DNA from: Diadema antillarum
Taxonomy: Eukaryota
Assembly (NCBI RefSeq): GCF_040938485.1
Contig: NW_027271348.1
Span: forward strand, 310,001-374,000
Direction of reading: 5' to 3'
Length of the DNA stretch: 64,000 nucleotides
Shown: piece after piece, positions 23,871 through 36,268 of the stretch
Layout: each line of letters begins with the position of its first letter
Position numbering within the stretch: position 1 is the first letter of the stretch
Notes under the pieces: model-generated
What the model was told of the DNA's origin: nothing
Seen by the model: the letters and a program-made list of their open reading frames with translations, nothing else
Database searches by the model: none
Position numbers and translations under genes: made by a program

Positions 23871-26409
23871 CCATCTTTTTTTCTTCATATTCTGCTTAGT
23901 TTCCTTTTTTCTCTTCCGTCTTCTTCTCTTTCTTCTTCAATCAGTTCCAAAGTTATACATCTTTAAACGTTTCACAGTCGCCTCGCGCCCGGCGGCACGC
24001 ACGCTTGACATGCACAAGTCCGTCCACTAATTATCTTCCATATAGCACAAAGAAGAGGCCCTCCCAGCGGGAGCGACAGCCCAGTTGCCAAGCTAGGCGT
24101 GTAGAGGGTAGAGAGGACATGTAGAGAGGATTCCTCGGCGCTGCCCTGAGGCGATGGTAATCAGGAAAAGCATTTTGATAGTGAAGTCACGGAATGACTC
24201 CTAGGTTAGGTGGCTCAAAAGGTAGATTACTGAGGGCCTCCAGGACCTTGGGCAGACTCCAAGAGGGGAGAAGTGTCTTAGTAGGTGGTTGTTGGAGGAA
24301 AAATTCCCCGGAGAGGCGAGTTAAAGTGGGGGCGGTAGACACATTCGTGCCACCTTGGAACCCGCGGTGAATGGCGGCAATGGCACATCTGTAGCCCTGA
24401 ATCGTGGCGAGGGCCAGGCCCTTGTCAAAAAGGTGCACTAGAAAGTCAGCCACCTTAGGTAGCAGAGTCGTGTGGGGGTCGATCTTGACTCCAGCACACC
24501 AATTTAAGAAGCCAGGCGGGCGAGGCCAGCCTGAGAGCTGCCCTTCGGGATGATGGCCACGTAGGCAGGTGCAAGTGGTTCGGGGGGGGGGGGGAGGGTG
24601 TGGCTCACCTGACAGAGGCTGTGTCAGTAGATCTGGCCTGCTTGGAAGGGCTCTTAAGAACTCTGCCAACAGGCCCAGACGCTCTGGATACCACAGTCAC
24701 TTTGGCCAACATGGTGCAATCAGGAGTACGGAGGCCTAATTATTGGAGGAAAGGCATAGGCGCGGAGACTCGTCCATTGCACGGAGAACGCATTCCCGAC
24801 CCACACCGCCACGTCTTGCATTCAGGAGCAGTACCGAGGCAGGCATATGTTCAGGGCTGATGGGATGTTCAGGGAGTGGAATAACTGATGCATCACCTCA
24901 CTATTCAGGGTCCATTCTCATGGGAGACGTTGCCTTCGAGAGGATGTTGTCCACCCCTAAGATTTAGAAGCAACCAGGGTGACACTCCACCTCTGACATC
25001 AGAGCCACAGATGTGTTGCAAATGGATTCAGCTGTGTGGAAGGAGTGCCCCCTGCTTATTAATATAGGCCACAAAAGTGATGTTGTCTGTGAAAATAGGC
25101 ACAGGACGGCCCTGAACCTCCGATCGAAATGCTGGGGGGCCTGCAGTTCCAGGATGTTGATGTTGGGGGTGACATTCGAGTGGGGCCAGGAGCCACTGGC
25201 TGTTCTCCCCCGACAGTGACCTCCCCAATTCTGTAGTGAGGCATCCGTCGTGACCCTGACAGACGGGATCGCCGTACAGGTGGGCTTGCCCTGAGAGAGG
25301 AAGGCAGAGGCACTCTACCTCTACAGTAGAGCAAGGATACGAGGTGTGGTACTTATGCTCTTGTGCAGGGGGTCGCAGTGGGGGTGTAGTGGTTGAAGAG
25401 GTGTACTTGGAGCTGACACATATGCAGCCTTGAGGCCTGAAAGTACATCCAGGCTGGCCAGATACCCGAGAATCCTGAGCCAGCACCTGGTGGACGTTCT
25501 GGGCCTTGAGCATAGGGTACACGCCGCCACAGTAATTGCTTCGACATACTGGGGCGTAGGTCTCGCATGCCCGCTCCGAAGATCAATAACTGCGCCCAGA
25601 AAGGTGGGGTGTTGTGTCGGAGATAGGACTGACTTCTCCCAATTGACTATGACCTCCAGATTCTCTACTGTGTGAAGTAGAAAGCTGGTTGATGCGGTCC
25701 TGAGAATCTGCCATCAGAAACCAGTTGTCCAGGTAACAGTACAGTCTGAGACCGTGGAGTCTGAGAAAACCTGCCATGCAGGTGGATGTGCAATGTGAAC
25801 AGTTGAGGGGCCGGTTTGAGGCTGAGTGGAACGGAATGATAATCGTAGGTTCTGCCGAGCAGATTTCTGGAGGACTGTGTGATCGGGACGTGCCAGTTCA
25901 CGTCCTTGAGGTCTATGGAGACCATCCAATCCCCTGTGCGTAGCTTGCAGCCAACCTCCCATTGGGGTTCCTGTACTAAGGCTGAGCCATCAGAAGCCAC
26001 CTTTGTTTTGTTTTTTTGGGCAGAGCGGGTACCGGGGTGCAATGGGCCACGGCCATGCCCTCTGCCCCAGGTGGAGTGCTGGTGGTAATCCCAAAAACTG
26101 TGGTTACCCATTGGGGGCAAAGGAGCAGTGCCTTGGTGTGGCTGGGCACGGAAGGAGAAGCGGCTGAAAGGGGTTGGAAAAATGGCACAGCTGCGAGGTC
26201 CTGTTGGTGCACTGCGATCTCCTCTTAGTGCTGCCGCACAAACTGACCTGAAAATAACTATGGCCTCTCTTAGGGGACGCTGCGCATGAGCTGGGCACTG
26301 TGCCACAGATAGAATCTGAGTGCTCGGAGGGTAAGGTCCCGGCACCGATGGGTCGTATACAGGGCCGTACGTGTTGTCTGCTGACACAGCTCGGTTACTG
26401 TAAGCAGCA

Positions 26410-26824
26410 GCAATAATAGCAGGTGACAGCTCTGGGGACAGTTACTCAGGGGCATTCCGTTTGCTGACTATTGCTGGTCACCTGGGATGAACCACAAGGG
26501 GTCGGCATCATTCGCCCGTTTTCTTGTGTGGGTGGGTAGGGGACCACTTCACCGGGTTGGCACCCTGCTCTTGGCGATGAATGAATAAGTGTGTGTCATG
26601 GCTAAACACACACTGGACCTCCATTTAATATCCTGCCCAGGGGACAGAGTGTTTTGCCTCTTACTAGAGGGGACGGAATGCTTACACACAACATTGCTCA
26701 GTGAGACTCGGGACTCGAACCCGGTACTCTTGGATGTGAAGGAAGATGCGCTACCGACTGAGCTATATCCCCGCCCTTGCCTCCAAAGCAGCTGGATTAC
26801 AGGTGCACGCCACAATGCCCAGCC
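26410..26824 (-). mobile_element. SINE inside the DIRS element: 7SL-like 5' segment + tRNA-derived head + Deu/Nin-type central domain
   Basis: 7SL-like GCTGGGCATTGTGGCGTGCACCTGTAATCCAGCTGCTTTGGAGGC (26823-26779). A-box TAGCTCAGTCGG (26765-26754); B-box GGTTCGAGTCC (26721-26711). Deu-like CCCCTGGGCAGGATATTAAATGGAGGTCC ... AAGAGCAGGGTG..AACCCGGTG (26645-26550). The 3' end is approximate. Confidence 0.8.
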
Positions 26825-27982
26825 ATCAAATTAATAATGGTCTATTCAAGGTTTATCAATAATGCTTTACGCTGACACTGGATACTTATCAGGGCAAGCG
26901 TCCAAACTTGGTCTCAGCGGCCAGTCAATCATATTCCTGGTGAAAATCTGTTGTGAGCGGTATGCCATGGGCCGCCAAGAGGAGGGAGTCCTGCTGTTCC
27001 TGGGTGGAGGACTCGGGATTCATTGAGTAGAACTCCTCGAGGTAACGCAACAGCAGGGTCTCAACAGGGCGGGGTCTCCGTGGGAGCTGTGGCCCAGTGT
27101 CACGGGGGACGGGTCATCATAGGAAAGGGAGTCATCTGGCCAGTTAGACCAGTCAGATTCCAACGAGTAATGGGCTGACCAGGGAGTGGCAGCCCTAGGC
27201 AGGGGGGTTGGGGCCCAAGAGGGGAGTGGGCGGGAGTGGCTCACTGCTAAGCCCGGGAACCAGAGGGACACCCTGAGTGGGGTTAACCTGTCACTCGGCT
27301 GCCCCATAGTGGCAATGTCGACTGGGGGCGGGTGCTGTCTTGGGGAAGCCACCGGGGGAGACGTGCCTGCAGCTGCCGCAGGCCGCTGAGGACCCGCAAT
27401 GGCCCAGCCATACTTATTGATGAGGACTTATATCATTCCGAACAGCTGGGGAAGCCAGGGGTAGGGGAGGGAGCACGGCAGATGGTCCTGAGCCCATGTG
27501 GAAGATGTGATACACCAGCACAAGACGGGGGCTCCCGTTGCCCACAGGCTCATCCTCTCAGGAGGACTTCACTGAGGGCAGCCAGGAGCGAGAAGGCTCA
27601 TGCGGGTGCCGTACTAGGGGTGGCGACTGCAATATCAGCTGACCTATCCACTAGCCTGGTCTCCTGGGGCTGCCAAAGAGGCCCGCGTCCACCTATTGCA
27701 CAGGGCTTTCCACAGAACTTCGGAAAAAGGGAACCCCCTTCAGGAAGAGGACAGGAAAACTTGCTGCAGCAGAGGGACATGCTGTAAGGGAAAAGAAATG
27801 TGAACAATAACTGTCAGAAGAAAATTTGTGTACTTACCGACCCTGTAGGGAAGGGAAAACATGGTACATAAATATCATACCAGTCAGTCAGACTGCAGCT
27901 CGTACTGTATTGATTAATACGCTTCCCATTTATCGTACTTCTCATTTCACATATTGTCAAAATGAATCTGACATTGGTGCGA

Positions 27983-28325
27983 GTGTAGGTTTCGCTTGGT
28001 TCCCAATAGAGGGAGCCTATGCTAGATAGACACATATTTTGGAGAAAAATTTGAATATGATTTGAATGTTATGTAGCAGGAATTTGTGGCTAGGGTGCGG
28101 TTGTGCATCAAGATAGGAGAGTGAGCAGTTGCATTTGAGTCGTGTAGGTTTCGCTTGGTTCCCAATAGAGGGAGCTTATGCTAGATAGACAAATATTTTG
28201 GAGAAAAATTTGAATATGATTTGAATGTTATGTAGGAGGAATGTGTGGCTACGGTGCGTTTGTGCATTGAGATAGGCGGTTGTGCATTGAGATAGGAGAG
28301 AGAGCGAGCAGTTGCATTTGAGTCG
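27983..28325. repeat. 159-bp tandem duplication in the putative DIRS 5' region
   Basis: gtgtaggtttcgcttggttcccaatagaggga starts at both 27983 and 28142; the copies are nearly identical. Confidence 0.9.
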
Positions 28326-33589: not shown

Positions 33590-36268
33590 CCACATACGAA
33601 TAAATGTATTTTTTGAGAATTTTTCAGGGATAGTTAATAGACATTTAGATGAATATATTCCCAGATTAAAAGAAAAGTCAGTTAATTATAAAACGTCCCC
33701 CAAATTACCATGGATTACAAAATCTCTTCTTCGTTCAATAAATAGGAAAAATAGGTTATATTATAAATTCAAAATGAAAAAAACTGAGAAGTTAATATAT
33801 AAATACACTTCGTATAAAAATATTTTAACGAAGATTATACGATTGGAAAAGAGAAAATATTATATGATTCAGTTAGAAAAATATAAACATGATATGAAAA
33901 ATACATGGAAGGTGTTGAAGCAGGCTATGAATATATCAAAAAAGAAATCAGAAATTATAAAAATAAGACATGATAATAAAGTTTTTGAAGATCCTAATGA
34001 TATAGTCAATATTTTTAACTCTTATTTTTCAATGATTGGAGAGAATTTGGCAGAAAAAATACCGCAGTCAAATATACATTTTTCTGAATTTTTAGGTCAA
34101 TCCAATTCCAGTTCTATTTTTTTTGTTCCAACAACAAAATATGAAATAATAGATATTGTTACCGCAATGAATAACAAGCGAAGTGCCGGTCATGACGATA
34201 TCAGTAATTTTATTTTAAAGGGGATTATATCTTCAATTGCAGACCCACTTTCATATATTTTCAATAAATCCTTATCAAGTGGTGTTTTTCCTGATTTTAT
34301 GAAAATAGCTAAGGTTTTCCCTTTATTTAAAAAAGGAGATGATTCTGATATATGTAATTATAGACCTATTTCTTTGCTTTCATCTTTATCTAAAATATTG
34401 GAAAAATTGATATTTACAAGAACAATTAATTTTTTGAATTTGCATAATGTTTTTACAAATTCTCAATTTGGGTTCCGTCAGAAACATAGCACCATTCATG
34501 CTCTTTTAAAGTTTATTGACCACGCTGCGCACACTATTGATAATCATTCTCATCTTATTGGTATCTTCCTGGACTTCTCCAAGGCCTTCGATACAATTAA
34601 TCATGAAATATTACTTTATAAACTGTCTCATTATGGAATACGCGGGAAGGCCTTGGAGTGGTTCAGGAGTTACCTACAAAACCGAAAACAATATGTATCT
34701 CTGAACGAGTACAGCTCGAGTTTAGAATTCATTAAATGTGGCGTCCCACAGGGTAGTTTATTAGGACCTTTACTTTTTATCATTTATATTAATGACTTTT
34801 GTAGATCATCTGACATACTCTCATCTATACTTTTTGCTGACGATTCAAATATTTTCTTTTCTCACCAAAATCCAGATACTCTTGTACGCATAGTTAATTC
34901 CGAATTGAAAAAAGTAACTCAGTGGATAAGAGCTAATAAATTATCTCTTAATCTTCAGAAAACTAAGTATATGTTTTTTAGTAATTCTTTAGAAGATTTA
35001 GACACAGGTATTGTTCTTGATAACACTTTGTTAGAACGAGTTCCTCATATAAAATTCCTTGGTATCACAGTGGATGATAAACTTTCGTGGAGGCCGCATA
35101 TTACTAACATTAGTACAATAATTTCACGCAATATTGGTATTATTAATAGACTCAAGTTTCATATTCCATTATCCTCTTTGTTGACGTTGTATTTTTCTCT
35201 AATTTTACCTTATCTTAATTACGGACTCCTAGCGTGGGGTAGTGCCCATCAAAACTTACTAGATAAATTACTTTTGTTACAAAAAAAGGTTATTCGTATT
35301 ATTTGTGGCGTCCCGCCACGTTCCCATACAGAGCCATTATTTATTAAACATGAGATTTTGAAAATTAAAGATTTGTATTTTTTTCAACTTGGTCAGTTTA
35401 TGTTTAATTACAATGTAAATGCACTTCCCAGTATTTTTAATTCAATGTTCCCACGGAACCAGTCTTTTCATGATTATCCCACTAGACAATCTAATGAGTT
35501 TCATTTACCCCTCCTGAGAACTTTATTGGCTCAGAATACATTTACATACACTGGTCCTAGATTTTGGAACTCACTGAGCTGTGAAATAAAATATTCCCCA
35601 TCTTTGTATTCTTTTAAGCGCAAGTTGAAACTTTTTTTTATTAAATCCTAACTGACATGTTTTTTTTCCATTAACAGCTATAGTTTTTGTTAACCTCAGA
35701 GTTCATCATCCACCATCCAAACACTGAATTTATTATTACGTAAAGAAGTAGCCATTACAATCCTTGCTCAGCTGCATGCAGCACCAACTCTATGAAGCAC
35801 ATTCTCTACCATCCTCTGTTCCATTTCCCTTATTCAGCGTGTAGGTATTCTCTCATTCTCTCTTTTCTTCTTTCTTTCCTTCCATACTTTTCATCTATTC
35901 TGGCAAGTTGTGTCATGTTGTTGCGTTTCTTCTGTTTTGTCCCGTCCTGTCGTATATTATATTCGTCACAAGTGTTTGTAAATAAGTAATTTATAGGTTT
36001 TATGAGTGGTTCACAATCTACAAGCTTTGCTTTTTAGTGGACCTCTCTATTCTTTCTTCCTTTTTTTTTCAACTAAAGCATGACTTTGTATTATTTTTTT
36101 TTTGCCAGTATGCGCTCCTATGTTTATTGATACCATTTATTGATTAAGACAAATGTTCTTTGTTTATGATGTAAAACCTGATTTATCTTGTGTTATGTTT
36201 TTGTTGAAAAAGAAAAAAGAAGAAGAATGAAAATAAATGAATTGAATTGAATTGAAATTGAATTGAAA
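33590..36268 (+). mobile_element. 5'-truncated CR1-group LINE, copy 2 (same lineage as copy 1)
   Basis: Shares long near-identical stretches with copy 1 (e.g. tggacttctccaaggccttcga; gggaaggccttggagtggttca) and the same (TTGAA)n tail. Confidence 0.93.
33774..35651 (+). CDS. Uninterrupted C-terminal ORF2 (reverse transcriptase), 625 aa, of CR1-group copy 2; lacks the endonuclease domain
   Basis: ORF track: NYRPISLLSSLSKILEK, QFGFR, FLDFSKAFDTINH, GVPQGSLLGP, ILFADD, IKFLG; no stops over 1.9 kb. Confidence 0.85.
   Translation: MKKTEKLIYKYTSYKNILTKIIRLEKRKYYMIQLEKYKHDMKNTWKVLKQAMNISKKKSEIIKIRHDNKVFEDPNDIVNIFNSYFSMIGENLAEKIPQSNIHFSEFLGQSNSSSIFFVPTTKYEIIDIVTAMNNKRSAGHDDISNFILKGIISSIADPLSYIFNKSLSSGVFPDFMKIAKVFPLFKKGDDSDICNYRPISLLSSLSKILEKLIFTRTINFLNLHNVFTNSQFGFRQKHSTIHALLKFIDHAAHTIDNHSHLIGIFLDFSKAFDTINHEILLYKLSHYGIRGKALEWFRSYLQNRKQYVSLNEYSSSLEFIKCGVPQGSLLGPLLFIIYINDFCRSSDILSSILFADDSNIFFSHQNPDTLVRIVNSELKKVTQWIRANKLSLNLQKTKYMFFSNSLEDLDTGIVLDNTLLERVPHIKFLGITVDDKLSWRPHITNISTIISRNIGIINRLKFHIPLSSLLTLYFSLILPYLNYGLLAWGSAHQNLLDKLLLLQKKVIRIICGVPPRSHTEPLFIKHEILKIKDLYFFQLGQFMFNYNVNALPSIFNSMFPRNQSFHDYPTRQSNEFHLPLLRTLLAQNTFTYTGPRFWNSLSCEIKYSPSLYSFKRKLKLFFIKS

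What the first reader, a model, noticed from the sequence alone, without database searches (positions are those of the whole stretch)
26410..26824. Candidate 7SL-tRNA-Deu chimeric SINE (an Alu-domain-headed SINE in an invertebrate-like genome)
Seen: on the minus strand GGCTGGGCATTGTGGCGTGCACCTGTAATCCAGCTGCTTTGGAGGCAAGGGC runs directly, with no spacer, into a tRNA-like head (GGGGATATAGCTCAGTCGGTAGC...GGTTCGAGTCC) and then a Deu/Nin-type body. The first ~45 nt align co-linearly with the 7SL RNA 5' Alu domain (GCCGGGCGCGGTGGCGCGTGCCTGTAGTCCCAGCTACTCGGGAGGC). The CUGUAR motif is kept, GCTGG/CCAGC can pair, and most differences are at CpG positions. Known: well-defined 7SL-derived SINEs are reported from Euarchontoglires and from hagfish, where one arose by fusing 7SL to an older tRNA SINE. 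Inference: if multi-copy, this would be an independent origin of a 7SL-headed SINE in a non-vertebrate lineage, here on a Deu-domain backbone. A one-off template-switch chimera of 7SL and a SINE is the main alternative.
Basis: partly seen in the sequence, partly recalled or inferred. Interest (0 to 1): 0.82.

Follow-up and report, generated by a model that had tools for sequence, protein, structure and literature searches.

The report
Sea-urchin SINE with 7SL head
A 423-base retroposon copy, in what earlier notes call a sea-urchin genome, starts with the first 52 bases of signal-recognition-particle (7SL) RNA fused to a tRNA-type, Deu-domain SINE. The fusion is real, but I could not test whether it is a propagating family, which would be the first 7SL-headed SINE outside vertebrates.

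Summary
On the minus strand, 26824-26773 matches the 5' Alu domain of Metazoa_SRP (Rfam partial hit, 29.9 bits, E 6.5e-06). It runs without a spacer into a tRNA-like head with consensus-perfect A and B boxes, then a Deu domain, then a 148-nt tail ending in a short simple repeat.

The interpretation as a multi-copy SINE family stays untested. The window holds one copy. Protein, metagenome, prokaryote-genome, viral-contig and full-text routes found no relative.

Indirect evidence leans towards a propagated family. The head has lost 5 of 7 consensus CpGs, while the tRNA promoter part keeps all five of its CpGs. Very small contig sets from relatives hold parts of the element. This scan also noted the same architecture before on three other pieces of the same genome; one was followed up and has the same ~52-nt head. 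I could not read or verify those notes.

No significant target-site duplication was found, and helix 3 of the head is broken in this copy.

It differs from every published 7SL SINE (supraprimates, shrew mole, hagfish): it has only the 5' domain, keeps the tRNA head, has a Deu body, and sits in a non-vertebrate.

The parts
26773..26824 (-). 7SL-derived head: about the first 52 nt of SRP RNA (Alu 5' domain: helices 2-4, the U-turn and the start of helix 5). The boundary with the tRNA part is blurred by a short G-rich microhomology.
   Evidence: Rfam RF00017 partial hit at 29.9 bits, E 6.5e-06, model positions 1-52. Unique in the window.
26699..26772 (-). tRNA-derived head of the underlying SINE
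   Evidence: Rfam tRNA 16.8 bits, E 1.4; ARAGORN negative. D-arm and T-arm are recognisable. CpG observed/expected is 0.88.
26754..26765 (-). Pol III A box (TAGCTCAGTCGG)
   Evidence: The only match to TRGCNNAGTNGG in 64 kb.
26711..26721 (-). Pol III B box (GGTTCGAGTCC)
   Evidence: Exact match to GGTTCGANNCC. 3 matches in the window against 0.27 expected; the other two lie in the tRNA-derived array near 10.8-12.3 kb.
26550..26682 (-). Deu-domain body (about 133 nt)
   Evidence: Co-linear by eye with the Deu-domain alignment in the supplement of PMC7245038. The motif AAGAGYAGGG..AACCC.GGTG occurs once, with 0 expected.
26402..26549 (-). 3' tail of unknown LINE origin, ending in the short simple repeat (ATT)2(GCT)3
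   Evidence: Read directly. No similarity to any LINE 3' end in the window.

Best explanation
This is one retroposed copy of a low-copy composite SINE of an echinoid genome. Shown here: the architecture is 7SL 5' domain (52 nt), then tRNA-derived promoter unit, then Deu domain, then a LINE-type tail. Inferred origin: a reverse transcriptase copying a tRNA-Deu SINE RNA reached its 5' end and switched, at a short G-rich microhomology, onto 7SL RNA near nt 52-60, then ran to the 7SL 5' end. DNA recombination would give the same product. Inferred propagation: the chimera became a source gene. For the head to be inherited, Pol III must start at the first base of the head. That start would be directed by the 7SL-type A box in the head (about +13 to +23) working with the tRNA B box (about +104), or by both A boxes. 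A partner LINE recognising the tail then copies the transcript. The head equals the minimal Alu 5' domain that binds SRP9/14. It could therefore dock the RNA on ribosomes that are translating the LINE protein, as proposed for Alu. In this copy helix 3 is degraded, so that function is at best a property of the source gene.
For: Architecture. The head is homologous to 7SL (E 6.5e-06) and resembles the metazoan consensus (3-bp helix 4, AGCUGC loop) more than it resembles human Alu.

CpG asymmetry: of 7 consensus CpG sites in the head only 2 remain. The adjacent tRNA promoter part keeps 5 CpGs (observed/expected 0.88), and body plus tail are depleted (0.35). The one-sided p is 0.03-0.14, depending on the assumed ancestral count. 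This is the pattern of a source-gene lineage selected only for its promoter. It suggests the head was already old when this copy was made, and so was not copied fresh from authentic 7SL RNA.

Sequencing runs: two independent studies of organism A hold 55-60% of the element's sampled words. Runs of three other organism codes hold 5-25%. These include contig sets of only 13-19 million letters, in which a single-copy locus would rarely appear.

Unverified leads: three other notes on other pieces of this genome describe the same 7SL + tRNA + Deu chimera. Their lengths are 443, 411 and 168 nt, and one was followed up as 'first ~52 bases of 7SL joined to a tRNA-type SINE'.

Against: I saw no second copy myself. 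There is none in the 64 kb. There is none in JGI metagenome, prokaryote-genome or viral contigs. No look-alike of its translations exists among 5.8 billion or 1.84 billion proteins, although contigs of a host-like animal are in that collection.

Small libraries of organism A hold none of the words. There is no significant target-site duplication: the best candidate is 8 nt, reached by 35 of 500 shuffles, and it lies 46 nt upstream of the head. Three helix-3 pairs of the head are broken, and the 52-nt RNA folds no better than shuffles (z +0.74). The CpG argument rests on small numbers and on the Rfam consensus, because the host's own 7SL was not available.
Confidence: 0.6

Rival explanations
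1. A non-propagating chimeric retrocopy. A single template switch from a tRNA-Deu SINE RNA to 7SL RNA during target-primed reverse transcription produced this locus. If other loci exist, they arose by recurrent, microhomology-guided switches, as with U6/L1 chimeras. The chimera itself was never a source gene.
For: Only one copy was seen in all the data I could read. The junction lies at a G-rich stretch shared by the 7SL helix-5 start and the tRNA 5' end, which would favour repeated switching at the same place. With only the tRNA boxes active, Pol III would be expected to start near tRNA +1 and drop the head (established knowledge of type-2 promoters; inference). Diadema genomes are SINE-poor: 0.23% and 7,829 annotated pieces in D. 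setosum (PMC11066563).
Against: The head has lost most consensus CpGs and three helix-3 pairs, while the neighbouring promoter CpGs are all intact. That is unexpected if both parts were copied at the same moment, one of them from functional 7SL RNA. Small-RNA/LINE chimeras made by template switching usually carry the 3' end of the small RNA, not an internal breakpoint (own knowledge). The scan's notes report similar total lengths and the same ~52-nt head at other loci (unverified).
Confidence: 0.3
2. Assembly artefact or contamination: a piece of human Alu or 7SL, or a mis-join, placed next to a genuine SINE.
For: The head is Alu-like enough to hit the Alu-derived mir-1268 model (28.1 bits) and to trip the reads filter at 26786-26825 (the tool itself says this is no evidence of anything).
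Against: Only 52 nt are 7SL-like, with no further Alu or 7SL sequence. The head matches the metazoan consensus in features that differ from Alu. It ends exactly at the tRNA +1 position. Two independent studies of organism A hold most of the element's words, and similar loci are noted elsewhere in the genome.
Confidence: 0.03
3. Chance resemblance of a G-rich SINE leader to 7SL.
For: The score is below the family gathering threshold, and helix 3 is poorly paired.
Against: E 6.5e-06 for the 651-nt search, which is still about 6e-04 when scaled to the whole window. The match is co-linear from model position 1 and includes the invariant U-turn and both loop motifs. Two CM scans of the rest of the window found no other match to Metazoa_SRP with E up to 1.
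Confidence: 0.02

Closest known systems
SINE1-1_EBu (Ebu1-1), the hagfish 7SL-derived SINE (Kojima 2020, PMC7245038)
   Same: A 7SL-derived 5' end joined to an older tRNA-SINE lineage by chimera formation. A non-L1 partner with a simple-repeat tail. An origin independent of Alu/B1.
   Different: The hagfish element carries both the 5' (96 nt) and 3' (44 nt) parts of the Alu domain, with the central deletion. It has lost the tRNA head, and its body and tail are RTE-derived. The element here has only the first 52 nt, keeps a complete tRNA promoter unit behind them, and has a Deu body. The hagfish family has 2,363 documented copies with target-site duplications. Here only one copy was seen.
Composite 7SL/tRNA SINEs of supraprimates (B1-dID, B4, MEN, Tu types I-III)
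   Same: 7SL-derived and tRNA-derived units combined in one Pol III retroposon (PMC13023118).
   Different: Those are dimers or trimers of complete monomers descended from the FLAM/pB1 lineage (5' + 3' 7SL parts), and L1 mobilises them through A-tails. Here a bare 5' domain is fused to the tRNA unit with no linker, in a non-vertebrate, with a non-A tail.
DeuSINE superfamily (AmnSINE1, EbuSINE1/2, SINE2-6/7_EBu; Nin/Inv variants)
   Same: A tRNA (or 5S) head followed by the conserved Deu domain. The body here aligns with the published domain.
   Different: None of the papers read or searched here reports a DeuSINE with a 7SL-derived leader in front of its head.
Minimal 46-nt Alu 5' domain / SA50 RNA
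   Same: The head covers the same structural unit (helices 3 and 4, the U-turn, loops L2 and L1.2). That unit alone associates with SRP9/14 and is necessary for, and can promote, Alu retrotransposition (PMC12199147). The loop G-G and C..C positions and the U-turn are kept here (their role is from my own knowledge of Weichenrieder et al. 2000).
   Different: Three helix-3 base pairs are broken in this copy. Binding is untested.
Template-switch chimeric retrocopies (U6/L1-type)
   Same: A small cellular RNA joined 5' to a retroposon by reverse-transcriptase template switching. This is the likely founding event.
   Different: Such chimeras are dead on arrival and normally include the small RNA's 3' end. 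Here the 7SL breakpoint is internal, and the unit has intact Pol III boxes.

Membership tests
SINE (general definition, SINEBase/Kojima) | Short (about 80-600 bp) with an internal Pol III promoter (A and B boxes) | tested here: met
   423 nt. The A box at 26765-26754 and the B box at 26721-26711 both match the consensus exactly.
SINE (general definition, SINEBase/Kojima) | Many dispersed copies with a uniform chimeric structure | not testable with these tools
   One copy in the window. The only support is unverified notes of three further loci.
SINE (general definition, SINEBase/Kojima) | Flanking target-site duplications | tested here: inconclusive
   The best shared flank word is 8 nt, reached by 35 of 500 shuffles, and it is not adjacent to the termini.
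SINE (general definition, SINEBase/Kojima) | 3' tail shared with a partner LINE | tested here: inconclusive
   No similarity to the LINE copies in the window. The tail ends in a short simple repeat, as in CR1-, L2- and RTE-mobilised SINEs. No TE library was available.
SINE1 (7SL-derived SINEs) | 5' end homologous to 7SL RNA | tested here: met
   RF00017 model positions 1-52, 29.9 bits, E 6.5e-06.
SINE1 (7SL-derived SINEs) | Both the 5' and 3' Alu-domain parts, joined after a central deletion of about 183 nt | tested here: not met
   Only the 5' 52 nt are present. The CM's proposed 3' closing strand is 8 nt inside the tRNA part at low posterior probability.
SINE1 (7SL-derived SINEs) | Head able to fold as an Alu domain | tested here: inconclusive
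   The U-turn, helix 4 and the loop residues are kept. Three helix-3 pairs are non-canonical. The MFE fold is not the Alu fold, z +0.74. A single decayed copy says little about the source gene.
SINE2 / DeuSINE superfamily | tRNA-derived head followed by the conserved Deu domain | tested here: met
7SL RNA gene or full retropseudogene | An RNA of about 300 nt with an S domain | tested here: not met
   No match at the gathering score anywhere in the window. Only model positions 1-52 align.

The most novel reading that the evidence does not exclude
An echinoid Deu-SINE lineage captured only the minimal SRP9/14-binding 5' domain of 7SL RNA and has propagated with it, using a 7SL-type A box together with a tRNA B box. 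This would be an independent origin of a 7SL-headed SINE and the first in an invertebrate. It would be a natural experiment showing that the 5' domain alone gives a retroposition advantage with a non-L1 LINE partner.
Probability: 0.3. Interest if true: 0.8.

Novelty: new variant of a known kind. Interest (0 to 1): 0.55.

Why it matters
7SL-derived SINEs include the most successful retroposons known (Alu, B1). Yet they have been reported only from supraprimates, one shrew mole and hagfish, always with the same 5'+3' Alu-domain design (PMC13023118, PMC7245038).

A family in a sea urchin would extend this parallel evolution beyond vertebrates. It would also differ in design: it carries only the 5' domain, placed in front of an intact tRNA promoter and a Deu body.

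That would provide natural support for the recent cell-culture result that a 46-nt 5' domain is the functional core of Alu (PMC12199147). It would also raise a testable question about how Pol III picks its start site with two A boxes in tandem.

If the element is instead a set of dead chimeras, it is a minor curiosity of template switching.

Tried and rejected
(1) Other copies in the window.

No depth, joint or transcript data were obtained.

(3) Spurious-ORF route to other copies. There were no hits among 5.8 billion or 1.84 billion proteins.

(4) Host DNA through a LINE protein. The best hit is a 3.1-kb Tara scaffold carrying another copy of the LINE (97.7% nt). Its flank has an unrelated tRNA-like element and no 7SL head. 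The window's own genome is not in the collection, so I did not continue fetching short contigs.

(5) Junction and family patterns in metagenome, prokaryote-genome and viral contigs. The only hits were ordinary prokaryote-type tRNA genes.

(6) Full-text search for allowed-part strings, and for echinoderm 7SL SINEs. Nothing relevant was found.

(7) Target-site duplication. Not significant.

(8) Pfam and PDB typing of the surrounding GC-rich block. Only weak hints came out.

Rejected readings: a true 7SL gene or pseudogene (only 52 nt align) and a human Alu contaminant (too short, and consensus-metazoan features).

Full report
OBSERVATION. A covariance-model scan of 26300-26950 against all Rfam families gives Metazoa_SRP as the best hit: 29.9 bits, E 6.5e-06. 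Model positions 1-52 align to 26823-26773, after which the model's middle 240 positions are skipped. The score is below the full-length gathering threshold (70), so the whole-window scan at gathering thresholds is empty. That is expected for a 52-nt fragment.

Reading the alignment, 41 of 51 positions equal the consensus. The CUGUAAU U-turn, the 3-bp helix 4 and the G-G and C..C loop positions are kept. Five of the ten mismatches are CpG transitions, and three helix-3 pairs are non-canonical. The second-best hit is mir-1268, an Alu-derived family (28.1 bits). This shows how Alu-like the stretch is.

The head runs with no spacer into a tRNA-like unit at 26772-26699. Its CM score is weak (16.8 bits, E 1.4) and ARAGORN calls nothing. 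It does hold the only A-box consensus match in 64 kb, and a perfect B box 44 nt further on.

The next ~133 nt (26682-26550) are co-linear with the published Deu-domain alignment of AmnSINE1 and the hagfish EbuSINEs (supplement of PMC7245038). A diagnostic Deu motif occurs once in the window with 0 expected. A 148-nt tail ends in (ATT)2(GCT)3 at about 26402.

CONTEXT. The element lies in the same orientation inside a GC-rich block (about 23900-27900; 52-63% GC against 30-40% around it). The block is full of stop-ridden minus-strand ORFs. Pfam sees nothing in them. One ORF resembles RT-RNase H clusters by language-model features (0.94). Another has a weak Cre-type recombinase match (E 0.047). 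The block is therefore probably a decayed tyrosine-recombinase (DIRS-like) retroelement into which the SINE inserted. LINE fragments flank the block.

The flanks of the SINE show no convincing target-site duplication. The longest shared word is 8 nt. It lies 46 nt upstream of the head and 14 nt beyond the tail, and 35 of 500 shuffles reach that length.

IS IT MULTI-COPY? This is the decisive question, and I could not answer it directly.
- The look-up of sequencing runs lists two studies of organism A holding 55-60% of the sampled 31-mers. Runs of organisms B, C and D hold 5-25%, and an 'echinoderm metagenome' RNA-type library holds 23%.
Later queries used 26785 and below or 26826 and above. 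The only later call that spanned them was a within-window repeat analysis by reference.
- Translations of the element found no relatives among 5.8 billion and 1.84 billion proteins.
- The window's genome is not in the contig collection. A LINE ORF finds a 99%-identical protein on a 3.1-kb Tara scaffold, which is another copy of that LINE (97.7% nt) with a different flank. Host-like DNA is therefore present there only as short pieces.
- Junction and family patterns found only prokaryote-type tRNA genes in metagenomes. They found nothing in prokaryote genomes or viral contigs, and nothing in full texts.

INDIRECT EVIDENCE. (a) CpG asymmetry. Of the seven CpG sites of the SRP consensus within the head, two survive. 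The adjoining tRNA unit keeps five CpGs (observed/expected 0.88), including those inside both promoter boxes. Body plus tail are depleted (0.35). If head and SINE had been copied at the same moment, the head from functional 7SL RNA, equal decay would be expected. The contrast gives a one-sided p of 0.03-0.14, depending on how many tRNA CpGs are assumed lost. The pattern fits a source-gene lineage in which only the promoter is selected and the head has been a passenger for a long time. That would mean propagation after the fusion. The numbers are small, and the host 7SL is unknown.

(b) Contig sets of only 13-19 million letters from relatives hold 5-23% of the words. This is unlikely for a single-copy locus, but I do not know which part they hold. 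Small libraries of organism A hold none.

(c) Leads from this scan. Three other notes on other pieces of the same genome describe a 7SL + tRNA + Deu chimera (443, 411 and 168 letters). One follow-up calls the genome Diadema antillarum and reports 'the first ~52 bases' of 7SL joined to a tRNA-type SINE in a DDX23 intron. I could not read those loci, so they are not counted as support. They do raise my prior that the junction recurs.

(d) Diadema genomes are SINE-poor: 0.23% and 7,829 annotated pieces in D. setosum (PMC11066563). A low-copy family is therefore what one would expect, and random host DNA would rarely contain a copy.

MECHANISM (inferred). The founding event was most likely a template switch, or a recombination, between the 5' end of a tRNA-Deu SINE RNA and 7SL RNA near nt 52-60. 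The G-rich start of helix 5 resembles the G-rich 5' end of the tRNA unit there, so the exact breakpoint is blurred.

To be inherited, the head must be transcribed. A type-2 promoter normally starts Pol III some 10-20 nt upstream of its A box, which here would be inside the head. Propagation with a constant 5' end therefore implies that the 7SL-type A box at about +13 to +23 is used with the tRNA B box at about +104. This is an inference from established Pol III biology.

The head corresponds to the 5' domain that alone associates with SRP9/14 and that is necessary for, and can promote, Alu retrotransposition (PMC12199147). A ribosome-docking advantage is therefore plausible for a source gene. 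In this copy helix 3 is damaged, and the 52-nt RNA folds no better than shuffles.

COMPARISON. Published 7SL SINEs are confined to supraprimates, a shrew mole and hagfish. All keep the 5' and 3' Alu-domain parts after a central deletion (PMC13023118; PMC7245038). The hagfish element also arose by fusing 7SL to an older tRNA-SINE lineage, but it lost the tRNA head and has an RTE body and tail. Rodent and tree-shrew composites join complete monomers. The element here meets the '7SL-homologous 5' end' criterion but not the '5'+3' Alu domain' criterion. It is a member of the DeuSINE/tRNA-SINE class by head and body. I therefore file it as a new variant of a known kind: a DeuSINE with a 7SL 5'-domain leader. 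That filing depends on multi-copy status.

VERDICT. The chimeric element is real (confidence about 0.9). A propagating family is the best reading (0.6). Dead template-switch chimera(s) are the main rival (0.3). Artefact or chance is unlikely (0.05 together).

Noticed in passing
window 23900-27900 (minus strand): A GC-rich (52-63%) ~4-kb block with stop-ridden ORFs. It shows RT-RNase H-like features (atlas 0.94) and a weak Cre-type recombinase match (E 0.047). It is probably a decayed DIRS-like tyrosine-recombinase retroelement hosting the SINE. Pfam finds nothing.
   Followed up: partly
window 27983-28305: A 159-nt unit repeated 1.8 times (94% matches), with a nested 20-nt repeat, at the edge of the GC-rich block.
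   Followed up: no
window 33703-36266; L001:1-2566: A LINE (RVT_1) copy that is 97.7% identical in DNA to a Tara metagenome scaffold (ERZ28654717, TARA_SAMEA6040077_METAG). DNA of the host or a close relative is therefore present in that ocean sample. The LINE ends in a (GAATT)n tail.
   Followed up: partly
L001:2603-2675: A different tRNA-like element (Rfam tRNA 25.6 bits) lies about 40 nt past the end of the LINE tail on the Tara scaffold. It has no 7SL head.
   Followed up: partly
window 10769-10779 and 12301-12311 (minus strand): Two further perfect B-box matches lie in or near the tRNA-derived ~230-bp tandem array that another first-reader note describes at 9190-12330. They do not resemble the SINE studied here (blastn negative).
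   Followed up: no
window 7705-8568 (minus strand): A 288-aa ORF with a borderline match to the adenylate/guanylate cyclase catalytic domain (21.8 bits against a cut-off of 21.9). It may be a host exon.
   Followed up: no
window 2641-2824: A run of 184 N (assembly gap or masked stretch), left untouched.
   Followed up: no
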